A stretch of 64,000 bases of DNA, from IMG/VR virus record IMGVR_UViG_3300043410_001892, positions 62,001 through 126,000 of that record; one strand, given 5' to 3'. Shown piece by piece: positions 1 to 61,103 of the stretch. The notes under the pieces were generated by a model, which saw only the letters and a program-made list of their open reading frames with translations, ran no database searches and was not told where the DNA came from. The translations under genes and the position numbers were made by a program. Each line of letters starts with the position of its first letter. The stretch's first letter is position 1.

Positions 1-1003
1 CATCTTCTCTAATAATTGCAGAAAGTCCGGGATGTTTTCTTATTGCAAGATTTCTAAAATTAGGATAATCTTTAATAATATCTCCTGGAGCTCTTAAAAT
101 ATCAATTGGATACTTTTCAATTTGAGTTTCAATTAAAACAGGTTTCTGTTCTGCAACAGTTCGTAGGTCATTAGCAGATAAATCAAAAACAGAAAAGTCA
201 TTAGCAGGTTGGTAAGAATATCTACTACTAATGCCTGAGATTAAATCGCTCAGTATTAGTGCAAGTATATACGGATGGAATTTATTCCCAGGTTTAGCAT
301 TAAAAGGACCTTTTGATTGATAAAGCAATTTATCATCTCTATTCCATTCAAATGTCAATACAGGCCAAACTGGTTTTAAACTGCGAAGACTTAGTAGATA
401 ATTTTCAGATCTTGATGCATTACCGCAGTGTCCCATAGCTTTTGATTCTAGTGGGTGCGTTGAGTGCGGTAACACCCACCAGTTATATTTTCCAACTGGC
501 AAGATTATTGAGTCACCTTCGAGAAGTTCAATATCTGGACGATTATCTAATTCTTGTTGTTTTTTATTATCAGCAATTATCTTTTGTTCTGCTGCAGTTG
601 CATTTGCTATCAATGCGTTTACTGTAGTAGTAGCAGGGCGAATAGCTTTAAGTACATTAGACATGTGTTGATTATTGCCGTAATTGCCTGCAAAGAAATG
701 TGTTAAATCTGTTTGTAGTTTATCAAATCCTTGAAACTGATATTCACCCTCGCCCCACATTTTATTAAATTCTGTTTGAAATGCTGGGTCTTGTGTTTCA
801 TTAAATCTTACAAAATTATTGTACAACAATGTAAACCATTGCAATGCTTGTTCTTTAATAAGTGTAGTTTTAGCCCATGATACTCGTGTGTCAAGTTCTT
901 GTTCACCTGAAGTACCAGGTGCACAGCTAGGTAGGTCAAGTTTCATCTTCCTAACTGTACTAGCATGATTTTCTAATAGAATTTTAAATTCATTAAATCT
1001 CAT
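1..1003 (-). CDS. PcfJ-like domain protein, paralog of 1000..3711; runs off the left edge and is not in the ORF track
   Basis: Manual translation from ATG at 1003 (ATGA overlap with the upstream stop): MRFNEFKILLENHASTVRKMKLDLP...ELDTRVSWAK...LLEGDSIILPVGKYNWWVLPHSTHPLESKAMGHCGNASRSENYLLSLRSLKPVWPVLTFEWNRDDKLLYQSKGPFNAKPGNKFHPYILALILSD. Open to base 1 and colinear with the neighbouring 903-aa protein. Confidence 0.85.
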   Translation of the reverse strand, partial: MRFNEFKILLENHASTVRKMKLDLPSCAPGTSGEQELDTRVSWAKTTLIKEQALQWFTLLYNNFVRFNETQDPAFQTEFNKMWGEGEYQFQGFDKLQTDLTHFFAGNYGNNQHMSNVLKAIRPATTTVNALIANATAAEQKIIADNKKQQELDNRPDIELLEGDSIILPVGKYNWWVLPHSTHPLESKAMGHCGNASRSENYLLSLRSLKPVWPVLTFEWNRDDKLLYQSKGPFNAKPGNKFHPYILALILSDLISGISSRYSYQPANDFSVFDLSANDLRTVAEQKPVLIETQIEKYPIDILRAPGDIIKDYPNFRNLAIRKHPGLSAIIRED

Positions 1004-3711
1004 TGTTGTCCCTCAAACGGATCTGGCCGCCATTGCTGTTGTTCAATGCTTTCTTTCATTTCTCTGATATAATCTTGAAATGCTTCCTCTTCAGTTGGGT
1101 GGCCAGCTATATCACGTAATTCGTTTAATTCTTCCTCACTAAACTTATCCGAGGCTACAACACCATCTATCTGATACATATGAAGTCGCAACGCGGTTGC
1201 AGCTAATTCAAACGTTTGATATCTACTTGGAATTGCAGCAAACGCTCCCCCGTTTTCGCCATTATTGCTATGTTGTATTGTTTTTAAATGTAGCTCATCA
1301 ATTTCTTCGGGAGTAAGAATCTTTGTAAAAACGTTATAATTTAGCCTGTTAATAATACAATCATTGTCAACATCATCATCATGTTCTACACCGGTAAACA
1401 ATACATGTTTTATCAAGTTACGATCAAGTAAGTGATACGGTAGCCAATCAGAAGTTATTAGGTATAATGAATTATTCGCGTCGTCTTCGGCAACAAACTC
1501 TAATGCATCAGTCCAAACGTCTCGAATTTCTTCAGTAGTAAAACTTTCGGGCGGAGTTGGGTTTTCTTCTAACTCAAGGAATTTCCAAGTGTTTCTTGTC
1601 ATCATAAGATTTATACCCTGTAATCTAAGATCCCCGTCTATTAGTTCAGGGTCGGCATACTCTAGTTGGTCTGGGTCTTTTTCAATTGCGTCTTTAGTTA
1701 TTGATTTTAGAAGCTCTATGTTAAACAATCCTTTTGGGATTTCATTTAACTTAAATGGATTATACATTTTACTAGAAAATACTGCAATCCAAGCTTTTTT
1801 TAATATTGCTTTATTTTTAAGAAGATGTTCTGGAAATTCTCTTAAATTATCTGGTTTTGCATAGCATCCCCTGACCCAAAAGTCTGCTTGGGTTTCGTCA
1901 CCATATGAATCAATATACGGGGCAATATTTACGTATTCAGGATGGTTACGTAATGTTTCATTTACAAACTCGTGTTTAAGACTGTTAGATATTAAGGCAT
2001 CTGGTAAATACCTTATTAAATTTGGGAGGCGCCTAATTGCATGTAACCATAGTCTTTCTCTTTCATTTTCGTCTTCAACTAAATCGGGTCTAAATCTTTC
2101 AATATACTCGCCTTGATTGTTACGTACTGCTTTATTTCTTATTTTATCTTTTTCTTCTTCTGGTATTGTAGCATTGACAAACGATTTGTGAACTACTAAA
2201 TGATGATTTTGATCAACTGCTGCGTTCCATAATTCAACTAAATCAGCACCGTCAAACAATCCATTAGGTAGTTTAGTTATTATGCTGCCTTCATCCCGAA
2301 TTTGGCTTTTCCATATATCTTTTTCATCATCTTCTGTGAATAAGTGTACTGGCCAGTCGGGTGTATTCAGATAAAATTTTGCAGCTTTCAACCATGCGGC
2401 TTTAACTTCTTCTCTAGTCCAACCGTCAGTGTTCATTCCTTTAATCAATTGAGGTTGTCTTGATAATGCTAGGTGTGCTAATTCTTTATAATGAGGAGCT
2501 CTATATGGCACTAGTTCAATTGCTGCTGGATTAGCGTTTTCAATTACTGACTTCATTATGTTATAGTTAGCACGTATACGATTATCACAATAACCTAAAT
2601 CACGAGGGTGAGCTATCATATATCTAGTAACTCGTTTTTCCCAATCTTGAAGTGTATTTGGAGCGTAGATAATCATCAGTGGATGTGATTTAATCGATTG
2701 TTCCCAAGTAGCTTCGTCAGTAGAAACATTTCCACTAGTATCAACTAATAAATTAATCCCTGGTAATCTCGTAATAGCAACCTTTCTATAATCTGGATCA
2801 GATCTTACCGATATAGGTGATCGTAAAAAGTCAATTGGGAATTTGTTAATTTGATCTACTATAAGCTTTGGTTTTGCTTGACTAATTTGGTTTATCAAAT
2901 CTTCTTTCATATCAAATATAGAAAAGTCACTACTAGCTTGGTATGATGTTCCGTATATACCTTCAACTATATCACTTAGTAATAATGCTAAAATTGCATA
3001 ATGAAATTTATTTGCTGGTTTAGAATTAGATCTTCCCTTCATTTGATGAAGTTCTTTCCTTTCAGGATTATATTCCATCGTAACCCAAGGCACTGGGGTT
3101 TTATCACGTAAACTTAATAATACACTTGAGCTCTGTGCAGCAGTACCACAATGCCCCATAAACTTAGATTCTGGTTCATGTGATCTAGTAGGTAATAACC
3201 ACCAATCACCTTGCTTACCAAGTGGTAATACTACATGGTCGCCTTCTAATATATCAATTGGAGTTTTATTTTTTAATTCTTCTTCATCAGCTTTTTTAAT
3301 ATCCTCTTCTACTGCTATCAAGTTTTTAACCAATGAATCAACTGTAGTAGTTTGTGCATTGATTCTTGAAAGTAATTGTATAGCGCGATTATCTCTCATA
3401 AATCTTGGAGTACCTAACCAATGATTTAACTCACTTTCAAAAACAGCAAAGTCGTCGATAGGATTTGCACCACCAAGCATACGCTCGTATACTGCTTTAG
3501 CTTTTGGATCAGTATTTTGTTTTAGCCAAGCTTCGTATAATGAAATATACCAAAGCATTGATTGATTTCTATCATTAAATACTTGTTTAGCCCAATTTAC
3601 CCGAGCGTCAATGTCTGCTACGTGGTCTGGAAGTTCAGTTTTAAGTTTGTTTAGTTTGCCATTATAATTTTCAAATAACAATAAATTTTCATATAATTCT
3701 CTTAGGAACAT
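1000..3711 (-). CDS. PcfJ-like domain protein with C-terminal DUF4116-like helical repeats
   Basis: ESKFMGHCGTAA...LLSLRD...VTMEYNP...LHQMKGRSNSKP fits the PcfJ E-x3-M-x-HC...SLR...TxE...QxKGxxN pattern. The C-terminal half has repeated P-x-x-L/I-x-Y/F-x-P units (PNLIRYLPDAL, PDNLREFPEHL, PDQLEYADPEL). Confidence 0.7.
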   Translation of the reverse strand: MFLRELYENLLLFENYNGKLNKLKTELPDHVADIDARVNWAKQVFNDRNQSMLWYISLYEAWLKQNTDPKAKAVYERMLGGANPIDDFAVFESELNHWLGTPRFMRDNRAIQLLSRINAQTTTVDSLVKNLIAVEEDIKKADEEELKNKTPIDILEGDHVVLPLGKQGDWWLLPTRSHEPESKFMGHCGTAAQSSSVLLSLRDKTPVPWVTMEYNPERKELHQMKGRSNSKPANKFHYAILALLLSDIVEGIYGTSYQASSDFSIFDMKEDLINQISQAKPKLIVDQINKFPIDFLRSPISVRSDPDYRKVAITRLPGINLLVDTSGNVSTDEATWEQSIKSHPLMIIYAPNTLQDWEKRVTRYMIAHPRDLGYCDNRIRANYNIMKSVIENANPAAIELVPYRAPHYKELAHLALSRQPQLIKGMNTDGWTREEVKAAWLKAAKFYLNTPDWPVHLFTEDDEKDIWKSQIRDEGSIITKLPNGLFDGADLVELWNAAVDQNHHLVVHKSFVNATIPEEEKDKIRNKAVRNNQGEYIERFRPDLVEDENERERLWLHAIRRLPNLIRYLPDALISNSLKHEFVNETLRNHPEYVNIAPYIDSYGDETQADFWVRGCYAKPDNLREFPEHLLKNKAILKKAWIAVFSSKMYNPFKLNEIPKGLFNIELLKSITKDAIEKDPDQLEYADPELIDGDLRLQGINLMMTRNTWKFLELEENPTPPESFTTEEIRDVWTDALEFVAEDDANNSLYLITSDWLPYHLLDRNLIKHVLFTGVEHDDDVDNDCIINRLNYNVFTKILTPEEIDELHLKTIQHSNNGENGGAFAAIPSRYQTFELAATALRLHMYQIDGVVASDKFSEEELNELRDIAGHPTEEEAFQDYIREMKESIEQQQWRPDPFEGQQ

Positions 3712-3738
3712 TATAAATCCTTTAAATATAATTTATTA

Positions 3739-3746
3739 TATTTATT
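3739..3746 (-). promoter_or_regulatory. T4-late-like promoter motif (AATAAATA) upstream of the PcfJ-like gene
   Basis: ATAAATA core about 30 nt before the ATG, followed by AAGGA Shine-Dalgarno. Confidence 0.45.
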
Positions 3747-3750
3747 CCAT

Positions 3751-5145
3751 TTAGTAGTCGTCTACGTCTAAATTATTGATCAAATCTCGCAGTGCAGAGC
3801 TTTGTATACCGGGTTTAACTTTAGCAGTTTCTTCTACTGTAGTTCTGTTTTTAATTGAATTTAATAATGCATTACCTGCTGTTGGTGCAGATGCATTACC
3901 GTACCCTTGATCTTCTTCTATGTCAGTAATTCGTAAAGTATCAATATCATAACCAAGATCAATTTTCATACCAACACCTGAGCTGCTACGTGTTTTCATA
4001 AGTTGGATTTGATATCTACCACGTTCGCGCATTGCTCTACTTGTAAAAATACCAAACACGTTATCAGCAGTTTGAATTTTACTTAACCCACCTGAGATAT
4101 GACTATGGTCAAATTCAACTTCCTCTACCGCTCCTCTATTAAGCTGTGCCGCAGTAACAAATACACAGTTCTTTTCAACTGCTAGATTTCTTAATTCCTC
4201 ACTAACATATTTGTCTTTAATGAATAAGTCAGCTGGACTAATCTTTTTAGATATTGGCATTAGCAAATCTAAATAATCTACTAATAGTACGTCAACTTTA
4301 ATGCCTGATTTAATTTCGTATTCTTTTAAATAACTTCTAATATCGTTAGCTGTTTTGCCTGACGGCATATATTTAACTTGGAATGATCCGGATTTCTTAC
4401 TAATCATTCTAACTTTAAGTTCTACATCATCAATATTTTTAAATACTTCTCTAGTTGAAATACCTGTAAGCATACTATCAATACGCATTGAAACAAGTTC
4501 TTCACTAAGTTCTAATGTTAAGTAAACTACATTCATTCCTGCTAATGCCCAGTTTACACCTAAGTTAGCTAAGAATAATGATTTACCAGCGCCCGATCCA
4601 CCTGCAAAGATATTAAGTTCTCCTCTGTTCATACCGCCAAAGAGTCTATCATCCATGTTTTTCCAACCAGTAGATACTTGTCCGTTTTTATCTTTAATCT
4701 TCATTAGCCGTTCTCTTGGATTAGCAAAATAATCAGTACCAAGATCTTTTTGTAATCCTATTTGTACAGCCTTTTTAATTTTATCTTCAACTGGGCCATA
4801 TTCACCTTTTTCAAGTAAATCAGCTGATTCATTAATAGCTCGCTCGAGGCCTTTATGTCTAATAAATGTTTCAAAGTCTGAAAGTAACCAATCGTAATGC
4901 TCTTCTTTAAGGTTATCAATTTCTTTAAGATCACCTTTTGTTGCTGCATTGATAATATCAAATGTTGGCATTACATTATGTTCGTTTACGTAGTCGTTTA
5001 TAAATTCTGCAGGTTTTTGTAATTTGCGATCAAACAAGGAATGATCAAAAATTGATTGGCATCTAACAAACGTAGCTGCATCACTTATCATCATTTCTAA
5101 ATATAATTTTTGTATATCATAACCATAGTCTACGTTTTGTTTCAT
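3751..5145 (-). CDS. gp41: DnaB-like replicative helicase (T4 gp41-like)
   Basis: Walker A GGSGAGKS, LTLELSEE, VDYLDL, TAAQLNR, KIQTAD and QLMKTRS motifs. Confidence 0.95.
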   Translation of the reverse strand: MKQNVDYGYDIQKLYLEMMISDAATFVRCQSIFDHSLFDRKLQKPAEFINDYVNEHNVMPTFDIINAATKGDLKEIDNLKEEHYDWLLSDFETFIRHKGLERAINESADLLEKGEYGPVEDKIKKAVQIGLQKDLGTDYFANPRERLMKIKDKNGQVSTGWKNMDDRLFGGMNRGELNIFAGGSGAGKSLFLANLGVNWALAGMNVVYLTLELSEELVSMRIDSMLTGISTREVFKNIDDVELKVRMISKKSGSFQVKYMPSGKTANDIRSYLKEYEIKSGIKVDVLLVDYLDLLMPISKKISPADLFIKDKYVSEELRNLAVEKNCVFVTAAQLNRGAVEEVEFDHSHISGGLSKIQTADNVFGIFTSRAMRERGRYQIQLMKTRSSSGVGMKIDLGYDIDTLRITDIEEDQGYGNASAPTAGNALLNSIKNRTTVEETAKVKPGIQSSALRDLINNLDVDDY

Positions 5146-5166
5146 TTAATATCCTGTTGAAAGAGT

Positions 5167-5194
5167 AGTACGTTATGCACCTACATAACGTACT
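5167..5194. terminator. Inverted repeat between the DUF2490-like gene and the helicase
   Basis: AGTACGTTATG-cacctA-CATAACGTACT, 11-bp stem; no clear U-tract. Confidence 0.45.
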
Positions 5195-5204
5195 CGTACA
5201 TCAA

Positions 5205-5903
5205 TTACTTAAACACGTCGCCGTATAGTGATACACTTAAGATATGCGCCATTCGATCGTAATTATTTTCACGATTCATATATTGATTTAAATAACCAAT
5301 TTCAGTTCTGTAGTTATCGTTAAATTTATAACCAACTCCAACAAACCCTCTATTTTGATCAAAACCAGATACTGGACCCCAGTTAGTTTTATTAACATTA
5401 GCAAAGAATTCTTCTGATGCAATCAGTGACCATTTTTTGTTAAGGTTATGTGTTAGTTTAGCTTGTTCACGGAATCTAACACTAGTATCGTCACTAATAT
5501 CTACAGTACGTTCTTCTAAGCGTGATCTAAAGGTTAGCGTATCAGAGTTATCAAAGTTATATCTATATTCATGTTGTTGCCAAGCACGTTGTTCATCTAG
5601 TGGTTTTTTAGCGTATGGCGGTTCACCGTACTGATATGCATAACCAAAGATTACTTTATTGTTATCTGTAAGTTGATAGCCTAACCCAATCCGCCCAACT
5701 AAGCCGTGAATATCAAATCCAGGATCATGAATTGATTTAGGGTTATCTGTTGCACGAGCAGAACCTTCTGCATAATACAATGCTTTTGAATTAGCAATGT
5801 TACCAGAAAGTACAACTGTCCCCCATGTTCCAAATAATTCTTCAGTACTAGCAGTTGCTACTACTGGTAATAATAATGTCAATAATAATAAAAGTTTTTT
5901 CAT
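5205..5903 (-). CDS. DUF2490-like outer-membrane beta-barrel protein with signal peptide
   Basis: Signal peptide MKKLLLLLTLLLPVVATA. Amphipathic strands and DUF2490-typical motifs RIGLGYQL, EQRAWQQ, RSRLEER, RFREQAKL, SEEFF, FDQNRGFVGVGYKF, EIGYLNQY. Confidence 0.85.
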   Translation of the reverse strand: MKKLLLLLTLLLPVVATASTEELFGTWGTVVLSGNIANSKALYYAEGSARATDNPKSIHDPGFDIHGLVGRIGLGYQLTDNNKVIFGYAYQYGEPPYAKKPLDEQRAWQQHEYRYNFDNSDTLTFRSRLEERTVDISDDTSVRFREQAKLTHNLNKKWSLIASEEFFANVNKTNWGPVSGFDQNRGFVGVGYKFNDNYRTEIGYLNQYMNRENNYDRMAHILSVSLYGDVFK

Positions 5904-6883
5904 AAATCTACCTCTTTAAAAAAATTCTTAGCTCTTAATTGAATTTTAAGAGCATAGCTTTGCCGTGATTCAATGATTAGCCATAGTGTAGCCAATCGTC
6001 CAAGTTTAGTAACAGCATCGTTTACGTCTTTTATGCCTTCGGGCCATTCTGGCATACTTACTGACCATCCGTAATCGATTGCTTGTTCTACAGTTTTAAT
6101 GCCTTCGTGATCTCTATCCGGAACTAATATAATTTCTTTATAAAATCTTTTTAGTAACCAATTTTGTTTATCGTTTATTTCGCAACCTAATATTGCACAG
6201 CCATCAATGCTAATTGCATCAAGTGTACCTTCGCATACTATAATAAATTTTCGATCATGTGTTTGTCGATCAAGATTAAAAACAAACCCAGGTTGTTGTT
6301 CTGATAAGTATCGTGGTCCATGATTAGGGTCAACACTTCTTGCTGTGTACCCAACTAAACGATTTTCATAGTAATATGGTATAATCAATCTTTTATTATA
6401 TTTGACATGTGAACTCCAATGAAATGGATAATCATCCAAATATAAATTTCGACTGTTCATATATTCCAATACTGGAATAAGTTTATCTGGTATATTGTTT
6501 AAGTAAGTTGTAATAGGTTTTGCGTTGTATGGCAAAGTCTTTGTTTCAAAAGACGGAATTAACGTTTCTATTTGTAGAAGTTCTGAGGCTTCTACTCTAA
6601 ATGCTTCACGTGTTAGTTTAGAAATTTCACTATCGCTTATATTAAGAAAGCGCATAAAATCTTTTACTCTTTTGCTTATATGCCGACCTGGTTGCCAACT
6701 TGCTTTAAACCCACAATTAAAGCAATGGTAAGATAAACCTCCATCATTGTTAGTAATAAAGCCACCACGACTTCTTGTATCCTGGCAACAAGGTGCGTTG
6801 CCAGTGATCCATCCGCTTGGTGTTTTTTTAGTTCGCCTACCAGTTTGCCAGTATACAAGTAATGTATCTGTAATTAAGTTCAT
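5900..6883 (-). CDS. gp61: DNA primase (T4 gp61-like): Zn-binding domain plus TOPRIM
   Basis: N-terminal CCQD...HCFNCG; TOPRIM CEGTLDA and PDRDHEG; KDVND. Confidence 0.9.
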   Translation of the reverse strand: MNLITDTLLVYWQTGRRTKKTPSGWITGNAPCCQDTRSRGGFITNNDGGLSYHCFNCGFKASWQPGRHISKRVKDFMRFLNISDSEISKLTREAFRVEASELLQIETLIPSFETKTLPYNAKPITTYLNNIPDKLIPVLEYMNSRNLYLDDYPFHWSSHVKYNKRLIIPYYYENRLVGYTARSVDPNHGPRYLSEQQPGFVFNLDRQTHDRKFIIVCEGTLDAISIDGCAILGCEINDKQNWLLKRFYKEIILVPDRDHEGIKTVEQAIDYGWSVSMPEWPEGIKDVNDAVTKLGRLATLWLIIESRQSYALKIQLRAKNFFKEVDL

Positions 6884-6909
6884 ATGGTAGGTTGGTTGAT
6901 TAAAATACT

Positions 6910-6938
6910 ATTATACTATAACACAGTAACGCTGTCAA
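6910..6938 (-). promoter_or_regulatory. Consensus sigma70 promoter for the primase-porin-helicase genes
   Basis: Minus strand TTGACA-N17-TATAAT (plus 6933-6938 and 6910-6915), mostly embedded in the 3' end of the upstream gene. Confidence 0.85.
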
Positions 6939-7719
6939 CCGTTCCGGTAGGGTTGACAGGATTGTTACCTTGATATAGTACTCTAAAATATTTAAAATCT
7001 GCGATGTTAATGTCGTTGAATGTTACGATTACTGTAGTAGCTGTTGGTAAAATACGTTCAGCTAATTTTGTTGCATGTAAGAATGAATTCACACTAATAG
7101 TTGAATTAGTTGTAGCTTCAAGCCATATTTTTCCAATAAAGCCTGTAACTGCAATAGAAAAAGATAAGCGTGTAGTAGGGATTGCTTCATAATAGGTTGC
7201 AGGTATAGCACTTGTGTGATATACAACATTGCCCATAAAATCAATTTCACCTGTAAATGTTTTATAAATTTTTTCATCACGGAATGTTGGCATGGCACTA
7301 CCGATGAGATCCATAGTCCCTACTGCTCCAAATTTAGTGTCAGCATATAGCAACACATCTTTTCCATCTTTAATTGCTGAAACGCTAAACTTTAAAAATT
7401 GAGGAGTTAAATCAGTAAGATCTTCTTGTGGTATAGTTACTACTGCAATTCCTTTCTTTTCAGTTAGTTCGAGACGATATGGGCTATTAGGCAATGCGGT
7501 ACCTGATGCATCCATGATGTTTAATTCAATAAAGGTTAGTGTAGTCAAATCGATTCTTTTTTGATCTGCATTCTTAATTTCGAATTCAATGGTATTATCA
7601 ATACCATTATATAATTTTACGTTTCTTTGATACACTGATGAAAACTCCACTGTAAATCCGGCCAGATCGATTAGAAGTAAGACTCGGTTTGGGTATAAAT
7701 AACTTGATATTTTTTGCAT
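6916..7719 (-). CDS. Hypothetical beta-rich protein, possibly structural
   Basis: Intact ORF; likely ATG at 7719 after AAGGA and a late-like promoter; no family recognised with confidence. Confidence 0.6.
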   Translation of the reverse strand: MQKISSYLYPNRVLLLIDLAGFTVEFSSVYQRNVKLYNGIDNTIEFEIKNADQKRIDLTTLTFIELNIMDASGTALPNSPYRLELTEKKGIAVVTIPQEDLTDLTPQFLKFSVSAIKDGKDVLLYADTKFGAVGTMDLIGSAMPTFRDEKIYKTFTGEIDFMGNVVYHTSAIPATYYEAIPTTRLSFSIAVTGFIGKIWLEATTNSTISVNSFLHATKLAERILPTATTVIVTFNDINIADFKYFRVLYQGNNPVNPTGTVDSVTVL

Positions 7720-7745
7720 TGGCAATATCCTTTTATATATTTATG
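7694..7745. promoter_or_regulatory. Overlapping divergent late-like promoters
   Basis: TATAAATA on plus at 7694-7701, inside the minus gene. CATAAATA on minus at 7738-7745, overlapping the ATG of the plus gene. Confidence 0.5.
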
Positions 7746-8120
7746 ACAAACCTAAGAGATAACATAGAACAAAATTTACCCTTTATAAGTGTATTAAATT
7801 ATGGAAACGACGAGTATGTTGGTATAATCATTAACCAAGATCAGTATGTAACAAGTTTTTATGATTTAAATGCAATACAATCTGCCGAAGACAAAGCTAC
7901 ATTCTTAGAAGTTGGCGAAATTTGGTGGTGGGAATCAAATAGACAATTACCAATATCAATCTTTTGTAAAGATGATATACGACCGTTTAGTTATGCAATT
8001 AAAACTTTCAATAGTAAAGATACTAGAATTATTCTAGGCCCAGTAGTTAATTTAATGAATCTAACAATTAAACGAGTCAAACGTAAATCAGTTCAACTCG
8101 TCCGTCGTCCTACACGTTAA
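7743..8120 (+). CDS. Hypothetical protein (WWWESNR motif)
   Basis: Likely start MTNLRDNIEQ at 7743; natural composition; fills the gap between two minus-strand genes. Confidence 0.7.
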   Translation: MTNLRDNIEQNLPFISVLNYGNDEYVGIIINQDQYVTSFYDLNAIQSAEDKATFLEVGEIWWWESNRQLPISIFCKDDIRPFSYAIKTFNSKDTRIILGPVVNLMNLTIKRVKRKSVQLVRRPTR

Positions 8121-56941: not shown

Positions 56942-58117
56942 TTAGCTAAATTTAACACTTGTATGTGTGATACCAACACGACCTAAGTAGTCAGCAGCGT
57001 TACCCAAAGATGACGCAGTGTTAGAAAGTTCAACATAACCATAACGTGTCATGAACGATACAACTGGTTCAAATGTTGATGGATCAAGTACAACACCTGA
57101 TGACATCAATGGAATATATGGACAGTAGAATGCAGGTGCATCTGATTCTGAACCACCTTTGTAACCAATTAAGATTGAAGTATTGTCTGTAGCATAGCTG
57201 TTTACATATACTTTTAATGAGTTGTTTAAAGTACCAACGAATTTTGTATTAGTTGGAGCTTCAAATGTACCTTCAGTTGTACGAGCAAATGCTGAAGTTG
57301 TAGCAGATTGCAAAATAGTTAATGCAAATGGAGATACAACAGCATAGTTACCAGCACCACGACGTGTACGTTGTGCAATCAAGTTGCTTACACGGTTGAT
57401 TTGAACAGCTAATGCAGCGTGTTCGTCACCTACGAATGTAGCAGTACCTGATACTGCAGATTGATTGTATGTTTCAACATCTGATCCAGCCAATGTTAAT
57501 AATGAAGCGATAATTTCTTGATCGATCTCAGCGGTAATTTCTTGAGCCAAAGCAGCCATAATTTCTGCTTCAACGTCAATACCTTGTTGTGCTTGCGCAT
57601 CTTGAGCAGATTCAAATGTCCAGCGAGCTGACAACTTACGTGTTTTAGCTTCAACTGTTTGTTTCAAGATTTGAATGCTCATTTTTTTACCAGCTTGTCC
57701 TTCTAAAGTTGCAGTTGACGTAGCTTTTGCTGCGTTTGCATTTTCATTACCTGAATATGCTTCTGCAATTTTGAATGGGCTTAACGCTTCTTCGCCTGCT
57801 AATACACCTGCTCCAGTGCTTGTGTCTGCATAACGAACGCGCAATGTGTGGATTTGACCAACAGGACCAGTCATCGGTTGTACCCCAACCAATTCGTTAG
57901 CGATAACGGTTGGCATAACACGACGGATTACTGGTAAAATCACGCGGTTTAAAGTTGCAACGTTGCCAGCAGATGTAGCACCAGCAGTTGGACTTTCCAT
58001 CAAATACTTACGTGTATTTTCAAGTGTTACGCCCATTACTGATTTTTTTGTACCTTGCAAGCCTTCTAAAAGAGCTTGTTTTGTTTCTGCCCAACGGCCA
58101 TTAAGTAGTTCTGACAT
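56942..58117 (-). CDS. gp23: Major capsid protein
   Basis: VIRRVMPTVIANELVGVQPMTGPVGQIHTLR, VEAKTRKLSARWT, AFYCPYIPL, FMTRYG. Confidence 0.98.
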   Translation of the reverse strand: MSELLNGRWAETKQALLEGLQGTKKSVMGVTLENTRKYLMESPTAGATSAGNVATLNRVILPVIRRVMPTVIANELVGVQPMTGPVGQIHTLRVRYADTSTGAGVLAGEEALSPFKIAEAYSGNENANAAKATSTATLEGQAGKKMSIQILKQTVEAKTRKLSARWTFESAQDAQAQQGIDVEAEIMAALAQEITAEIDQEIIASLLTLAGSDVETYNQSAVSGTATFVGDEHAALAVQINRVSNLIAQRTRRGAGNYAVVSPFALTILQSATTSAFARTTEGTFEAPTNTKFVGTLNNSLKVYVNSYATDNTSILIGYKGGSESDAPAFYCPYIPLMSSGVVLDPSTFEPVVSFMTRYGYVELSNTASSLGNAADYLGRVGITHTSVKFS

Positions 58118-58135: not shown

Positions 58136-59227
58136 TTATAGTCCAGCGAGGCGGCGGATATCAATAATGTTTGATTCATCTTCGCTGCTACGGTTGGTGT
58201 TGGAAATTTTATTTCCGGTTATTTCTTTAGCTTCTACAAGAGCTTGTCTTTTTTGTGGTGCTTGTTTACCAGAAATTACTGCTGGTAAATATTTTTCAAA
58301 GCTTTCATTAAGTTTTGAAGTTTTCACACTCGTCATCAATTCGCTCATGATATCACGTTGCTCTACGCTAAGAGGAGCTAATAACTCACTCATGATATCT
58401 TTTCTTTCTTGCGTTTCTTTCAACGCACGGATTTCTGCTTGTTTGCTTTCTAATATTTTTTCAGCTTTGATAACTGCTTTAGCAGCTTCATTGATGGCCA
58501 AATCTTTCATGTCTATGACTTTGAGCAATTTTGCAGTTTCCGATTTATCATTCAAGTAACTTGCTTGATATTCAGAAGCAAATGCTTCAAATAACTTACG
58601 ACCAAAATCACTACGGCGAGCTGATTCAATGTCTTCTTTTAATGAAGTAATTTCAGCGTTTAAGGTTTGACCTACAACACTTTCAACCATTGTAGCTGCA
58701 CGTTGTACAAATTGTTGTTTTACTCGTTTGATTTCTTGACGACCTTCACGAATTAGACGAACTTTTGATTCGGCTAAATCCTGTTTGTCTTTATAAAATT
58801 CTGTAATTTCTTGAGCCAAAGCTTCTACTACAAAATGTTCCAATGTGCTAAATTTATTTGCCATTGACATTTGATCTTCGTGCAATTCTTTAACTTCTTG
58901 TGCTAATTGACGTGTAACGAATTTGTTAACCGTGTTTGCACTTTCAGTCATTTTCTTAGCAAATTTAACTTTCATTTCTGCTAATTGCATACGATCTGCA
59001 ACGAATTCGCTAAGTTCATCAGATAGTTGTTCAGAGATCATACGATCAACTGCTTCAACCATGATGTTTTTGTCATGCTCATACTTTTGAGCGAATTCTT
59101 CGCGTAGTTGTTGAGCAACAATTTCACGGTTTTCAACGATACGTTGTTCCCATGCTTGCTCAATAGACTCTTTGATCTCTTGCGAAACCACATTGTTTTC
59201 AAATAATGTTTTTAATGCATCCAACAT
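58136..59227 (-). CDS. gp22: Prohead scaffold/core protein
   Basis: Coiled-coil, E/K-rich protein between protease and capsid genes. Confidence 0.85.
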   Translation of the reverse strand: MLDALKTLFENNVVSQEIKESIEQAWEQRIVENREIVAQQLREEFAQKYEHDKNIMVEAVDRMISEQLSDELSEFVADRMQLAEMKVKFAKKMTESANTVNKFVTRQLAQEVKELHEDQMSMANKFSTLEHFVVEALAQEITEFYKDKQDLAESKVRLIREGRQEIKRVKQQFVQRAATMVESVVGQTLNAEITSLKEDIESARRSDFGRKLFEAFASEYQASYLNDKSETAKLLKVIDMKDLAINEAAKAVIKAEKILESKQAEIRALKETQERKDIMSELLAPLSVEQRDIMSELMTSVKTSKLNESFEKYLPAVISGKQAPQKRQALVEAKEITGNKISNTNRSSEDESNIIDIRRLAGL

Positions 59228-59241
59228 GTGATTCTCCTTTA

Positions 59242-59868
59242 CTATTGGAGTCCGTTTATTATATTTAATAAACTTTCTTTAAGGTATTTTTGCGCCTTTG
59301 GATCACCTCTTACCTCTTCCGCTAAACGAATTGAATTAAGACCACCTTTACTATTCATTAAGTGTTCGTAGATTGGGGTAGGATAAGCTCCTGGTGCACT
59401 TGGTTGAGCTACCATATCAACTGTGATAATCTCAAAATCTGATACTTCACCGGATCCGGAATCACTAACATTGCCAGATCCGCGTGAGCTAACGCCAAGT
59501 TTCACACCACTTTCTAACATGGTTTTAATTAGTTGACCCATTGGTGTTGGTAAAATTTTAAGTTTACCATAACCATTTGGACCTTCCATCCACATGTTAG
59601 TTATCATATGTGAAACTCGGTCTAAATTAATTTTTAGATCATCTGGGTGATCTACTTCTCCTAGTACAGAATAACCATTTTGAATTTGATCGTTGAGGGT
59701 CTTAACAGCCTTGCTAATCTCACTCACAGGGTACACACGTTGATTTGCGTTTCGGATGCCACCTTGTATACAGATACCGCTCATATACAAGTTTTTTCCT
59801 TCCTTATCGTCAGATTCAACGATCATTTGCGCTTCGTTGAAGCTAAGGTTTTCTCGGAGATGTAACAT
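59242..59868 (-). CDS. gp21: Prohead protease
   Basis: NANQRVYP, LGEVDHP, KLGVSSRGSG, DMVAQPSAPGA. Confidence 0.96.
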   Translation of the reverse strand: MLHLRENLSFNEAQMIVESDDKEGKNLYMSGICIQGGIRNANQRVYPVSEISKAVKTLNDQIQNGYSVLGEVDHPDDLKINLDRVSHMITNMWMEGPNGYGKLKILPTPMGQLIKTMLESGVKLGVSSRGSGNVSDSGSGEVSDFEIITVDMVAQPSAPGAYPTPIYEHLMNSKGGLNSIRLAEEVRGDPKAQKYLKESLLNIINGLQ

Positions 59869-59871
59869 AAA

Positions 59872-60753
59872 TTACTTGCTGCCTCTTCCGCGGAATACAC
59901 TTGTAGTGTTTTGTCCGTTGTCAGGACTTTTTCCTTTTGTTTCAGGACCATGACCTGGTTCTCTTTTCTTAAATGCGGTTTTTCCAGCTTTGCTGTCTGG
60001 ACGATTTTGGATTGTGCCTAAGCCTGAAGTTAAATCGCCTGCTTTAGGGCTTAACAATCCACCTTGGGTGCCTTCACCTTTAGATTCACCTGCAAATTTA
60101 GGTGCTACGCCGCCCATGTCGTTATATTTTGCTTTGTTAAAAATACTTTTGTTATTAACACCGTTGTCACCGTGTTTAGGTAATGCAACTTTGTTTACGT
60201 ATTCAAACATGCTTTGGAATTCATTTTCTTCTTCACCGGCTCCAAATTCGTCGCCGCCCATGCCCATGTCGTCATCGCCCATGCCCATTTCGTCGCCGCC
60301 AAACATGTCGTCGTGTTCTGGTTCATCTTCTTCACCAGCTAATAATTGTTCAAATTCTGATTTTAATTCGTCTAATGCATCTTCAAGATCTAATACACGA
60401 TTTTCTAAATCGCCATCTTCTTCATCACCAAATTCGTCATCACCGAATTCATCACCTTCTTCATCACCGAATTCATCGCCTTCTTTATCGCCAAATTCAT
60501 CGTCTTCGCCTTCTTCGTCATCACCAAAGGTGTCGCCGCCAAAGTCATCATCGCCTTCATCTTCGTCATCACCAAAGCTATCGGTGTCGTCTTCTTCAGA
60601 CTCTTCTTCTTCTTCAAATTCTTCTGCTAATAATTTTTCGTAAATCTCACGTGATTTACCTACTACGATATTGTGAAAAATATCTTTTGCTGCTTCATGA
60701 TCTTCATTGATCAAAGCCTCAAGCATGGCTTCAAATTTGGTACGGTCAGTCAT
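59872..60753 (-). CDS. Highly acidic prohead core protein (gp67/gp68 position)
   Basis: Start MTDRTKFE after AGGAG; D/E/G/F low-complexity tract of imperfect DEFGDEEG repeats. Confidence 0.65.
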   Translation of the reverse strand: MTDRTKFEAMLEALINEDHEAAKDIFHNIVVGKSREIYEKLLAEEFEEEEESEEDDTDSFGDDEDEGDDDFGGDTFGDDEEGEDDEFGDKEGDEFGDEEGDEFGDDEFGDEEDGDLENRVLDLEDALDELKSEFEQLLAGEEDEPEHDDMFGGDEMGMGDDDMGMGGDEFGAGEEENEFQSMFEYVNKVALPKHGDNGVNNKSIFNKAKYNDMGGVAPKFAGESKGEGTQGGLLSPKAGDLTSGLGTIQNRPDSKAGKTAFKKREPGHGPETKGKSPDNGQNTTSVFRGRGSK

Positions 60754-60863
60754 GTTTCTCTCCTGTGATATCATTTTCTACAAGGCTGTCTTATATTTAC
60801 ACTACTTATAAAAAATATTGCAAATATGGCGCCAAAGCGATGGTTTTTGGCATGTTCTTTAGA

Positions 60864-61103
60864 CTATATACCAGTTGGCGCAGGTGTTGAATACATTGTA
60901 TGAATAAAATTTAATTCAACTTCTTGTTCTAAGATATGAGCTTCACTACTCTTCCGAAGTTCATTAATCTGTCTAAGCGATAATCTTGTTTTTCTCGTAT
61001 CAGAACGATGAACTAACGATTTATCGTTATCAGAATTATACCTCATATCACTGGCAACATGCTTTGAGTTTGGGTCGTTATAAAAAAGTTCTCTAAGTAT
61101 CAT
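60864..61103 (-). CDS. Small head-module protein
   Basis: MILRELF...DTRKTRLSLRQINELRK; GATAAATA at 61109-61116. Confidence 0.7.
   Translation of the reverse strand: MILRELFYNDPNSKHVASDMRYNSDNDKSLVHRSDTRKTRLSLRQINELRKSSEAHILEQEVELNFIHTMYSTPAPTGI

What the first reader, a model, noticed from the sequence alone, without database searches (positions are those of the whole stretch)
1..3746. Tandem PcfJ-like repeat paralogs that look like head-packaged, ejected proteins
Seen: two adjacent, clearly homologous but diverged genes joined by ATGA. A late-like motif lies upstream, and the N-termini MFLRELYENLLLFE-N and MRFNEFKILLE-N end in L-x-E. Known: T4 internal proteins use a short N-terminal targeting peptide removed by gp21 after Glu. 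PcfJ-like domains are functionally uncharacterised. Inference: an expanded family of virion-delivered effectors with a conserved HC-containing domain and a variable helical-repeat binding region, possibly acting in anti-defence or host takeover.
Basis: partly seen in the sequence, partly recalled or inferred. Interest (0 to 1): 0.6.

Follow-up and report, generated by a model that had tools for sequence, protein, structure and literature searches.

The report
Leader-tagged PcfJ-like jumbo-phage head cargo
Two neighbouring genes of an uncultured 372-kb T4-like jumbo phage belong to a five-copy family of large enzyme-like proteins that carry the same kind of short N-terminal address tag that phage T4 uses to load proteins into its head, so they are probably packed into the virion and injected with the DNA, although nobody has yet seen them there.

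Summary
Window 1000-3711 (903 aa) and 1-1003 (start of a 952-aa gene) are minus-strand paralogs joined by ATGA. They are two of four tandem copies, and a fifth lies 70 kb away in a complete 372-kb phage genome. Each has three parts: a short leader ending in L-x-E, a roughly 320-aa module with an invariant His-Cys-Gly, and a variable DUF4116 alpha-solenoid.

"PcfJ-like" holds only at fold level; the Pfam score is below cut-off. The core looks GNAT-like.

The head-targeting idea gains indirect support:
- The phage encodes a T4-type S77 prohead protease.
- 66 of 72 N-terminal copies of the module have [L/I]-x-Glu 8-18 residues from the start. Copies buried inside polyvalent ART-containing proteins lack that Glu.
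- Twenty unrelated proteins of the same genome share the leader, including a head-cluster protein whose PA5oct ortholog is virion-detected.
- Leader-bearing genes are 14-fold enriched for the ATAAATA-type motif that precedes tail and head genes. The first gene of the array has it.
- AlphaFold leaves only residues 1-12 unplaced.

Virion presence, cleavage and function remain untested. Verdict: a new cargo family of a known T4-type capsid-targeting mechanism. Interest is moderate to high.

The parts
1000..3711 (-). Gene D, 903 aa (P0001). It is the first gene of the four-gene tandem array. Layout: leader, helical N-domain, PcfJ-like core, DUF4116 solenoid.
   Evidence: ORF list and translation; AlphaFold models
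1..1003 (-). The first 334 codons of gene C. The full gene is 952 aa at genome 60145-63003, and the rest lies beyond the window's start. C is a paralog of D.
1000..1003 (-). ATGA overlap of D's stop codon with C's start codon, which suggests translational coupling.
3670..3711 (-). Predicted leader of D, residues 1-14 (MFLRELYENLLLFE), ending in L-F-E. The proposed S77 protease cut is after E14.
   Evidence: Residues 1-12 are the only stretch with pLDDT below 50 in the full-length model.
971..1003 (-). Predicted leader of C, residues 1-11 (MRFNEFKILLE), ending in L-L-E.
2722..3270 (-). PcfJ-like alpha/beta core of D with its flanking helices, residues 148-330. The fold is GNAT-like.
   Evidence: Atlas TM 0.71 to a viral PcfJ cluster; BFVD Foldseek matches to PcfJ-like proteins; VIA match to HAT1, Z 6.7
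3145..3153 (-). Codons for the invariant His187-Cys188-Gly189.
   Evidence: invariant in 79 of 79 sequences
1003..2706 (-). Variable C-terminal region of D, residues 336-903. It is made of degenerate DUF4116 repeats and is predicted to be an all-helical hairpin solenoid.
   Evidence: Pfam 30.3 and 33.2 bits against a 24.9-bit cut-off; DSSP of the model
3739..3745 (-). ATAAATA late-promoter-like motif, 28-34 nt upstream of D's ATG.
3718..3723 (-). AAAGGA, a Shine-Dalgarno-like site 7 nt before D's ATG.
3751..5145 (-). DnaB-like replicative helicase. It is the upstream neighbour on the same strand and is context only.
   Evidence: Pfam DnaB_C 65.7 bits
59242..59868 (-). T4 gp21-type prohead serine protease (Peptidase_S77), the proposed processing enzyme.
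60864..61103 (-). 79-aa head-cluster protein between the portal gene and the protease gene. It starts MILRELFYND, the same leader type as D. Its PA5oct ortholog, EST35_0150, was detected in virions.
58136..59227 (-). Scaffold-position protein of 363 aa starting MLDALKTLFE|NN, which carries an L-F-E motif like that of D.
56942..58117 (-). T4 gp23-type major capsid protein, with L-M-E|S near residue 41.

Best explanation
The two genes belong to a five-member family in a T4-like jumbo phage. Four copies are tandem and co-oriented, and one is dispersed. I propose that they are cargo of the phage head.

Each protein starts with a short leader of 11-14 residues here and 8-18 across the family. Its pattern, M-[R/K]-x-x-E-[L/F]...[L/I]-x-E, resembles the 10-residue T4 capsid-targeting sequence MKTYQEFIAE.

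Inferred steps:
1. The array is transcribed late from the ATAAATA-type promoter in front of gene D.
2. The leader takes the protein into the scaffolding core of the prohead.
3. The phage's S77 (gp21-type) prohead protease cuts after the Glu of [L/I]-x-E.
4. The mature 75-108 kDa acidic protein stays in the head and enters the cell with the DNA.

The mature protein has three parts: a helical domain, a PcfJ-like core of GNAT-like fold, and a DUF4116 alpha-solenoid. The core carries invariant Glu, His-Cys, Ser, Arg, Lys, Asn and Asp. The solenoid differs between paralogs.

My best guess is that the core is a Cys/His-dependent transferase-type enzyme or a ligand-binding module, and that the solenoid selects the target. 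Paralog expansion would then diversify the targets. In other phages the same module is built into giant polyvalent proteins next to ADP-ribosyltransferase and acetyltransferase domains, which fits a role in the first minutes of infection.

Shown here: gene structure, paralogy, domain layout, leader conservation and its statistics, presence of the protease, and the promoter-motif association. Inferred: packaging, cleavage, ejection, and any enzymatic or anti-host function.
For: 1. The phage has the machinery. Peptidase_S77 scores 88.5 bits and a gp23-type capsid protein 318 bits. The head gene order is portal, small protein, 300-aa protein, protease, scaffold, MCP, as in PA5oct.

2. The leader is conserved and positioned like a T4 capsid-targeting sequence.
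- In alignment A2, 66 of 72 N-terminal copies have [LIVFMY]-x-E at one column. Leader length is 8-18 residues (mode 9). The next residue is Ala in 49, Asn in 11, Ser in 5 and Gly in 1.
- Only 1 of 7 internal copies has that Glu, so the fold does not need it.
- The T4 sequence MKTYQEFIAE is cleaved once at its end (PMC8442874). Its residues 4 and 7 target and residues 8 and 10 direct processing (PMC9026906). T4 propeptides are 10-20 residues and cleavage follows Glu (PMC5694885).

3. The leader is portable.
- 25 of 540 predicted proteins of this genome start with the motif, against 1.5 expected at control offsets.
- 20 of them are unrelated to the family and to each other.
- They include the 79-aa head-cluster protein, whose PA5oct ortholog MKINDIITE|G was detected in virions by ESI-MS/MS.
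- They also include an endonuclease VII/HNH-like protein and a weak T7 gp0.7-kinase-like hit.

4. Timing.
- [AC]TAAATA lies within 60 nt upstream of 13 of 22 leader-bearing transcription units, against 49 of 525 other genes (odds ratio 14, p 3e-8).
- ATAAATA precedes tail sheath, tail tube, head-closure and virion structural genes.
- D has the motif and E has ACTAAATAC.
- Early-type motifs are confined to 0-46 kb and 352-372 kb and are absent from the window.

5. Structure. In the full-length model (pLDDT 87.5) residues 1-12 are the only segment below 50. In the domain model residues 1-10 average 65 against 94.6 overall.

6. Co-occurrence. Of IMG/VR records at least 90% complete that carry the family, 9 of 10 encode an S77 protease.

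7. Relative with a proteome. In PA5oct, 9 of 93 MS-detected proteins carry a leader-like start against 6 of 366 others (odds ratio 6.4, p 7e-4). With one start rule for both sets the figures are 6 of 90 against 6 of 366 (p 0.017).

8. Conflict context. Internal copies sit in 1,600-3,100-aa proteins with ART-PolyVal, GNAT and deoxyribosyltransferase-like domains. Iyer et al. 2017 predict that this protein class is packaged and injected (PMC5512222).
Against: - There is no direct evidence of virion presence or cleavage. The phage is uncultured, and the only GenBank phage with a homolog, Salicola SCTP-2 gp31, has no virion proteome known to me.
- PA5oct, the relative that does have a proteome, lacks the family.
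- The array lies directly downstream of the DnaB-like helicase and primase on the same strand, and paralog E lies downstream of a recombination-nuclease-like gene. Earlier read-through transcription is therefore possible.
- The promoter assignment rests on motif enrichment only.
- The proteins are acidic (pI 4.9-6.0), unlike the basic T4 internal proteins.
- PA5oct's MS list also contains obvious non-structural proteins such as ribonucleotide reductase and thymidylate synthase, so that test is noisy.
- A 700-950-aa protein contains many internal L-x-E triplets by chance, so it might be degraded rather than kept.
- GNAT-fold matches are modest (Z at most 6.7), and no cofactor motif was identified.
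Confidence: 0.55

Rival explanations
1. The proteins are cytoplasmic, non-virion enzymes or adaptors made in the infected cell, for example for host takeover, DNA metabolism or counter-defence. On this view the conserved N-terminal helix serves another purpose, such as partner binding, a stability signal or efficient translation initiation.
For: - The genes sit in replication and recombination blocks. D follows a DnaB-like helicase and E follows a gp46-like gene.
- A relative, P0100, lies among queuosine and nucleotide-metabolism genes.
- The proteins are acidic, unlike the T4 internal proteins.
- No proteomic evidence places them in virions.
Against: - This view does not explain why 20 unrelated proteins share the leader.
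- It does not explain why the Glu is lost exactly when the module is internal.
- It does not explain why leader genes are enriched for the structural-gene promoter motif.
- It does not explain why a head-cluster virion protein carries the leader.
- T4 internal-protein genes also lie outside the head cluster (my own knowledge).
- In PA5oct, MS-detected 'structural proteins' are encoded just downstream of the primase and helicase genes.
Confidence: 0.27
2. The proteins are prohead core or scaffold accessories. They are targeted into the prohead by the leader and then chopped up by the protease and expelled, so they serve assembly, for example head-size or core organisation in a jumbo capsid, and are not delivered to the host.
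For: - All the leader and protease evidence above applies equally.
- The scaffold-position protein has a similar L-F-E start.
- Long helical solenoids could act as structural rulers.
- Many internal L-x-E triplets are expected by chance in proteins this long.
Against: - The invariant His-Cys, Glu, Ser, Arg, Lys, Asn and Asp set in a compact alpha/beta core looks like an active or ligand-binding site, not a scaffold.
- The module occurs inside polyvalent proteins next to ART and GNAT enzymes.
- Copy number and C-terminal regions vary rapidly between phages, which is unusual for assembly parts.
Confidence: 0.13
3. The resemblance of the N-terminus to a capsid-targeting sequence is a chance or compositional effect of an AT-rich genome rich in Lys, Ile, Glu and Leu, and the ORFs are ordinary paralogous hypothetical genes.
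For: - The genome is about 34% G+C.
- MK- starts are common in phage genes.
- The regular expressions were designed after seeing the family, so they were chosen post hoc.
Against: - The same pattern at 38 control offsets averages 1.5 hits against 25 at the N-terminus.
- Family members from many other phages keep [L/I]-x-E at one alignment column (92%).
- The association with the upstream motif is an independent variable (p 3e-8).
Confidence: 0.05

Closest known systems
Phage T4 internal proteins IPI/IPII/IPIII and Alt: cargo carrying a capsid-targeting sequence and processed by the gp21 prohead protease
   Same: - A short N-terminal leader of about 10 residues with Glu-hydrophobic-hydrophobic-x-Glu followed by Ala, Gly, Ser or Asn.
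- A gp21-type S77 protease encoded by the phage.
- A leader shared by otherwise unrelated proteins.
- Genes scattered outside the head cluster.
- Family content that varies between related phages.
   Different: - The cargo here is 75-108 kDa, acidic, and built of a PcfJ-like core plus a DUF4116 solenoid. T4 internal proteins are small and basic, and Alt is an ADP-ribosyltransferase.
- The leader has Glu at position 5 rather than 6, and its length varies from 8 to 18 residues.
- Packaging and cleavage are not demonstrated.
Pfam PF14284, PcfJ-like proteins (named after PcfJ of Enterococcus plasmid pCF10; function unknown)
   Same: The alpha/beta core, residues 148-321, superposes on predicted structures of PcfJ-annotated viral proteins (atlas TM 0.71; Foldseek probability 1.0, E 5e-6 to 1e-4). 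13 of 17 close homologs give weak PcfJ hits over the same profile end.
   Different: - No member tested reaches the Pfam cut-off: best 15.7 bits against 25.
- Only the last third of the profile (positions 95-145) aligns.
- The family has its own N-terminal helical domain and leader.
Polyvalent proteins of phages and conjugative elements (Iyer, Burroughs, Anand, de Souza, Aravind 2017, PMC5512222)
   Same: The same module occurs inside phage proteins of 1,600-3,100 aa next to ART-PolyVal, GNAT and deoxyribosyltransferase-like domains. One such gene lies near a baseplate gene. That class is predicted to be packaged and injected.
   Different: The window's proteins are 'solo' versions with one enzyme-like module plus repeats. 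The 2017 paper does not name this module, PcfJ or DUF4116.
DUF4116 (PF13475) repeat proteins
   Same: The C-terminal regions match the repeat model: 167.6 bits for A, 166.2 for B, 52.7 for E and 30-33 for D. They are modelled as an alpha-solenoid, as predicted for the family (PMC8078820).
   Different: The repeats in D are degenerate, and those in C fall below the cut-off (17 bits). The function of DUF4116 itself is unknown.
GNAT-fold acyl-CoA N-acyltransferases (HAT1, ESCO1, MYST and bacterial GNATs)
   Same: Most of the top 50 structural matches to solved chains are GNAT-fold proteins covering residues 153-300 (HAT1 Z 6.7, ESCO1 Z 5.6). BFVD also returns 'NAT_SF' and acetyltransferase proteins.
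   Different: - Z values are under 8 and sequence identity is 5-12%.
- The loop that would bind CoA pyrophosphate reads N-S-K-P rather than Q/R-x-x-G-x-G/A, by my reading of the sequence and DSSP.
- The invariant His-Cys has no standard GNAT counterpart.

Membership tests
T4-type capsid-targeted, gp21-processed head cargo | The phage encodes a gp21-type (Peptidase_S77) prohead protease and a gp23-type capsid. | tested here: met
   PF03420 scores 88.5 bits at window 59242-59868. PF07068 scores 318 bits at window 56942-58117.
T4-type capsid-targeted, gp21-processed head cargo | An N-terminal propeptide of about 10-20 residues ending in (L/I)-x-Glu. | tested here: met
   D ends in L-F-E14, C in L-L-E11, A and B in I-L-E13 and I-F-E13, and E in L-F-E14. 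66 of 72 family members with an N-terminal module have the motif at the same column.
T4-type capsid-targeted, gp21-processed head cargo | The leader is portable, meaning it is shared by otherwise unrelated proteins of the same phage. | tested here: met
   25 proteins carry it against 1.5 expected. The 20 non-family members are unrelated to each other by BLASTP.
T4-type capsid-targeted, gp21-processed head cargo | Late expression. | tested here: inconclusive
   An ATAAATA motif lies 28-34 nt upstream of D. The same motif precedes structural genes, and leader-bearing genes are enriched for it 14-fold. No transcript data exist, and read-through from the helicase gene is possible.
T4-type capsid-targeted, gp21-processed head cargo | The protein is present in virions with an N-terminus created by cleavage after Glu. 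| not testable with these tools
   The phage is uncultured. The only indirect evidence is from PA5oct.
Pfam PF14284 PcfJ | HMM score at or above the 25-bit gathering cut-off. | tested here: not met
   Scores are 13.5-15.7 bits, covering only profile positions 95-145. Of 79 family members, 2 match at E of 0.01 or better and none passes the cut-off.
Pfam PF14284 PcfJ | The same fold as proteins annotated PcfJ-like. | tested here: met
   Atlas TM 0.71 over 156 residues to a viral cluster in which 21% of members carry PF14284. Six PcfJ-like BFVD models match at Foldseek probability 1.0 or 0.99.
Pfam PF13475 DUF4116 | HMM score at or above the 24.9-bit cut-off in the C-terminal region. | tested here: met
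   D scores 30.3 and 33.2 bits, A 167.6, B 166.2 and E 52.7. C scores only 17 bits, below the cut-off.
Polyvalent proteins (Iyer et al. 2017) | Two or more distinct effector or enzyme domains in one polypeptide of a phage or conjugative element. | tested here: not met
   The window's proteins have one enzyme-like module plus repeats. Homologous modules do occur in true polyvalent proteins with ART-PolyVal and GNAT domains: P0054, P0064, P0070 and P0130.
GNAT acyltransferase superfamily | GNAT fold together with the acyl-CoA-binding motif. | tested here: inconclusive
   Fold matches reach Z 4-6.7 and dominate the list. No Pfam GNAT hit was found, and I could not recognise a Q/RxxGxG/A motif in the sequence.

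The most novel reading that the evidence does not exclude
The leader may be a general capsid-targeting code of a large uncultured clade of T4-like jumbo phages. In this genome it would tag at least 21 unrelated protein families: the five PcfJ-like/DUF4116 proteins, an endonuclease, a kinase-like protein and many unknowns. That would define a large injectable 'effector-ome' that can be read directly from sequence. On this reading the PcfJ-like module is a previously unrecognised Cys/His-dependent enzyme of GNAT-like fold. It would exist both as leader-tagged solo proteins and as a domain of ART-containing polyvalent proteins.
Probability: 0.3. Interest if true: 0.8.

Novelty: new member of a known kind. 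Interest (0 to 1): 0.6.

Why it matters
If the leader really is a capsid-targeting signal, ejected proteins of uncultured jumbo phages could be listed from sequence alone. Here that would mean about 25 candidates in one genome.

A family with thousands of members and no known function would gain a testable role: it would act at the moment of DNA entry. It would also link solo PcfJ-like proteins to the polyvalent proteins of phages.

There is a practical use too. T4 capsid-targeting leaders are used to load foreign proteins into heads, and a family of natural leaders of different lengths would widen that toolbox to jumbo capsids.

Tried and rejected
- Near-identity DNA search of window 1-8000 against GenBank phages found no match.
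- PHROGs gave no family for either protein.
- Foldseek against PDB found nothing at E of 0.001 or better.
- tblastn of two family members against 50,697 phage records found only Salicola phage SCTP-2 gp31.
- The A2 profile found no member in PA5oct.
- The PA5oct 482-aa 'structural protein' from the BFVD list (E 2e-3) is probably EST35_0205. hhalign shows no homology to the family (probability 0.15), so I dropped it as evidence.
- Complex prediction with the S77 protease and D residues 1-40 returned 'no answer' (score 0.01). This is not evidence either way.
- The search for related loci on genome contigs failed for lack of a conserved stretch, so occurrence in bacterial genomes and prophages was not surveyed.
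- The pCF10 record, which would have provided a PcfJ reference sequence, is not in the plasmid collection. No direct profile comparison with bona fide PcfJ was therefore possible.
- The literature holds no functional data for PcfJ or DUF4116.
- The exact T4 late promoter TATAAATA is rare here (25 copies, 7 upstream of ORFs), so I rejected it as this phage's consensus in favour of [AC]TAAATA.
- I considered that the N-terminal helix is simply the first helix of the fold. I rejected this because internal copies lack the Glu and AlphaFold does not place residues 1-12.

Full report
WHAT IS THERE

The window is bases 62001-126000 of a 372,173-bp virus record with direct terminal repeats, rated 100% complete. 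The finding covers two minus-strand genes.
- Gene D is window 1000-3711 and encodes 903 aa.
- Gene C starts at window 1003 and runs off the window. In the genome it encodes 952 aa.
- D's stop and C's start overlap as ATGA.
- D and the in-window part of C are 38% identical over 327 residues (E 1e-67).

Searching the whole genome shows five paralogs.
- A (791 aa), B (760 aa), C and D form a head-to-tail array. The spacings are 13 nt, 8 nt and a 4-nt overlap.
- The array lies directly downstream of a DnaB-like helicase. Further upstream are a DUF2490 protein and a Toprim primase.
- E (687 aa) lies 70 kb away, downstream of a gene resembling the recombination endonuclease subunit of phage PA5oct.

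ARCHITECTURE

All five paralogs share an N-terminal module of about 320-330 residues and differ more in the rest. A and B are 72% identical in the N-module and 38% in the C-region. Other pairs are 30-47% and 23-39%.

The C-terminal regions are DUF4116 repeats of varying preservation: A 167.6 bits, B 166.2, E 52.7, D 30-33, and C 17, which is below the cut-off.

A full-length AlphaFold model of D has mean pLDDT 87.5. Residues 336-900 form an unbroken series of helical hairpins. This fits the alpha-solenoid predicted for DUF4116 (PMC8078820).

The N-module alone models at pLDDT 94.6. It has a helical domain (residues 16-148), an alpha/beta core (about 157-250) and further helices.

Across 79 diverse homologs the invariant residues are W54, W170, E181, H187, C188, G189, S200, R202, T211, K225, N229, P232, F263 and D267.

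IS IT PcfJ?

By Pfam's own criterion it is not. Scores are 13.5-15.7 bits against a 25-bit cut-off, and only the last third of the profile aligns.

At fold level it is.
- The core superposes on a viral cluster partly annotated PcfJ (TM 0.71).
- Foldseek against viral models returns a run of 'PcfJ-like protein' entries at probability about 1.0.
- A language-model search agrees.

Against solved structures there is no significant Foldseek hit. An exhaustive aligner lists mostly GNAT-fold acetyltransferases over residues 153-300, led by HAT1 at Z 6.7 and ESCO1 at Z 5.6. I read this as a probable GNAT-like topology, not as proof of acetyltransferase activity.

HOW BIG IS THE FAMILY?

A profile search of 1.84 billion representatives finds 3,210 proteins at E of 0.001 or better and 373 at E of 1e-30 or better. 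IMG/VR holds 188 relatives, many on contigs of 200-560 kb. Tandem copies recur in 11 of 77 loci, and one ORF carries three copies. Among GenBank phages only Salicola phage SCTP-2 has a member.

In several very long proteins the module is internal. It is flanked by ART-PolyVal, GNAT and deoxyribosyltransferase-like domains, in one case near a baseplate gene. These are polyvalent proteins in the sense of Iyer et al. 2017. Those authors argue that such proteins are packaged and injected (PMC5512222).

THE LEADER

1. The phage encodes a T4 gp21-type S77 prohead protease and a gp23-type capsid. The head gene order is T4-like.

2. All five paralogs start M-[R/F]-[L/F]-[R/N]-E-[L/F] and reach [L/I]-x-E at residues 11-14.

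3. The motif is conserved across the family.
- 66 of 72 N-terminal copies have [LIVFMY]-x-E at one alignment column.
- That column lies 8-18 residues from Met-1 (mode 9).
- The next residue is Ala, Asn, Ser or Gly.
- Typical starts are MRAREFITE|ASYD and MRAYEFITE|AAYD.
- For comparison, the T4 capsid-targeting sequence is MKTYQEFIAE, cut once at its end (PMC8442874). Its positions 4 and 7 direct targeting and positions 8 and 10 direct processing (PMC9026906).

4. When the module is internal, the following Y-[D/E]-x-M-F helix is kept but the Glu is replaced (1 of 7 keep it). The Glu therefore belongs to the N-terminal position, not to the fold.

5. AlphaFold leaves residues 1-12 as the only low-confidence stretch of the full-length model.

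6. The leader is portable.
- 25 of 540 predicted proteins of this genome begin M-x-[LIFVAM]-x-E-[LFIM]-[LIFMYTK].
- The mean at 38 control offsets is 1.5.
- With leaders removed, the 20 non-family proteins are unrelated to one another.
- One is the 79-aa protein between the portal and protease genes (MILRELFYND, window 60864-61103). Its PA5oct ortholog, MKINDIITE|G, is annotated as detected in virions by ESI-MS/MS.
- Others are an endonuclease VII/HNH-like protein and a weak match to the T7 gp0.7 kinase family.

TIMING

The exact T4 late promoter TATAAATA is rare here. ATAAATA is strongly concentrated upstream of ORFs: 43 of its 92 copies, peaking 25-30 nt before the ATG. It precedes tail sheath, tail tube, head-closure and virion structural genes.
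- D has gaATAAATAt 28-34 nt before its ATG, at window 3739-3745.
- E has ACTAAATAc.
- Leader-bearing transcription units carry [AC]TAAATA in 13 of 22 cases, against 49 of 525 for other genes (odds ratio 14, p 3e-8).
- Two other enriched upstream motifs are the sigma70-like TTGCTATAAT and an unexplained CCAGTGAG(A/G)GA. Both are confined to the genome ends and are absent from the window.

This is motif evidence, not transcript evidence. Read-through from the helicase gene remains possible.

OUTSIDE SUPPORT

Of the family-carrying IMG/VR records that are at least 90% complete, 9 of 10 encode an S77 protease.

PA5oct is related to this phage (capsid protein 70% identical) and has a virion proteome.
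- 9 of 93 MS-flagged proteins have a leader-like start, against 6 of 366 others (p 7e-4).
- With a single start rule for both sets the result is weaker: 6 of 90 against 6 of 366 (p 0.017).
- The MS list includes some obvious contaminants, so I weight this test lightly.
- PA5oct also encodes MS-detected 'structural proteins' immediately downstream of its primase and helicase-position genes. That location is therefore compatible with virion proteins.

WHAT IT PROBABLY DOES

My best reading has confidence about 0.55 for packaging and processing, and lower for the function. The array is transcribed late. The leader docks the proteins to the prohead core. The S77 protease removes 11-14 residues after Glu. 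The mature acidic proteins (pI 4.9-6.0) travel in the head and enter the host with the DNA.

The His-Cys core would act on or bind a host or phage component, and the solenoid would choose the partner. Paralog expansion would then diversify targets. The recurring fusion with ADP-ribosyltransferases in polyvalent proteins points to early host manipulation or counter-defence, but nothing here tests that.

RIVALS

- Cytoplasmic proteins whose N-terminal helix serves another purpose (0.27).
- Prohead core accessories that are degraded and expelled (0.13).
- A compositional artefact (0.05).

LIMITS

- Gene calls outside the window are my own simple longest-ORF calls using ATG starts.
- The motifs were defined after seeing the family, although I checked them with offset controls and an independent variable.
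- The complex prediction gave no answer.
- No bona fide PcfJ sequence was available for a profile-profile test.

NOVELTY

The mechanism, a capsid-targeting leader plus a gp21-type protease, is textbook T4, and varied CTS-bearing proteins are known in T-even phages (PMC9026906). What is new is the cargo: a very large, uncharacterised PcfJ-like/DUF4116 family in uncultured jumbo phages. The apparent breadth of leader use in one genome is also new. I therefore file it as a new member of a known kind, with a plausible and more novel extension.

Noticed in passing
window 5205-5903 (minus strand): A 232-aa protein with a signal peptide and a strong DUF2490 match (149 bits) lies between the phage helicase and primase genes. 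DUF2490 is a family of bacterial proteins, so this is an odd passenger in a replication module.
   Followed up: partly
genome G000 0-7 kb, 41-46 kb and 352-368 kb (outside the window): The motif CCAGTGAG(A/G)GA occurs 24 times, almost always on the plus strand just upstream of small ORFs, and often at a spacing of about 200-230 nt. It may be an unknown promoter or regulatory RNA motif of the early regions. It is absent from the window.
   Followed up: partly
genome G000 3-40 kb and 364-369 kb (outside the window): TTGCTATAAT, an extended -10 sigma70-like motif, occurs 19 times. 18 of the copies are on the plus strand, and all but one lie near the genome ends. These are probably host-RNA-polymerase early promoters. 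There are none in the window.
   Followed up: partly
genome G000 132851-133795 and 349981-350700 (loci L011, L027): An endonuclease VII/HNH-like protein (start MKATEILE) and a protein weakly matching the T7 gp0.7 kinase PHROG (start MKIEEILSE, with ATAAATA upstream) carry the same leader type. They are candidate packaged enzymes.
   Followed up: partly
loci L036, L055, L067, L077, L093 and L098; proteins P0047, P0055 and P0164; PA5oct 127321-128817: Some family members carry a second leader type: [I/L]-x-x-L-A-G-[I/L/V] followed by L-x-E. The same type occurs on PA5oct's MS-detected protein EST35_0203 (MFNINDILRLAGVQAVKE). It is not present in this genome.
   Followed up: partly
locus L075 5149-10617: One 1,822-aa ORF of another viral contig contains three consecutive copies of the N-module, and a fourth copy lies just upstream. 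The module therefore also multiplies within a single polypeptide.
   Followed up: no
genome G000 245218-245385 (locus L008): A second, weak Gp23-family match (20.7 bits, below the cut-off) lies in a 171-aa ORF far from the head cluster. It could be a capsid-protein fragment or a decoration-like relic.
   Followed up: no
window 58136-59227 and 59872-60774 (minus strand): The scaffold-position protein (363 aa, phrog_10922) starts MLDALKTLFE|NN. The 300-aa acidic protein next to the protease has no family match. Both are probably prohead core components of this clade.
   Followed up: partly
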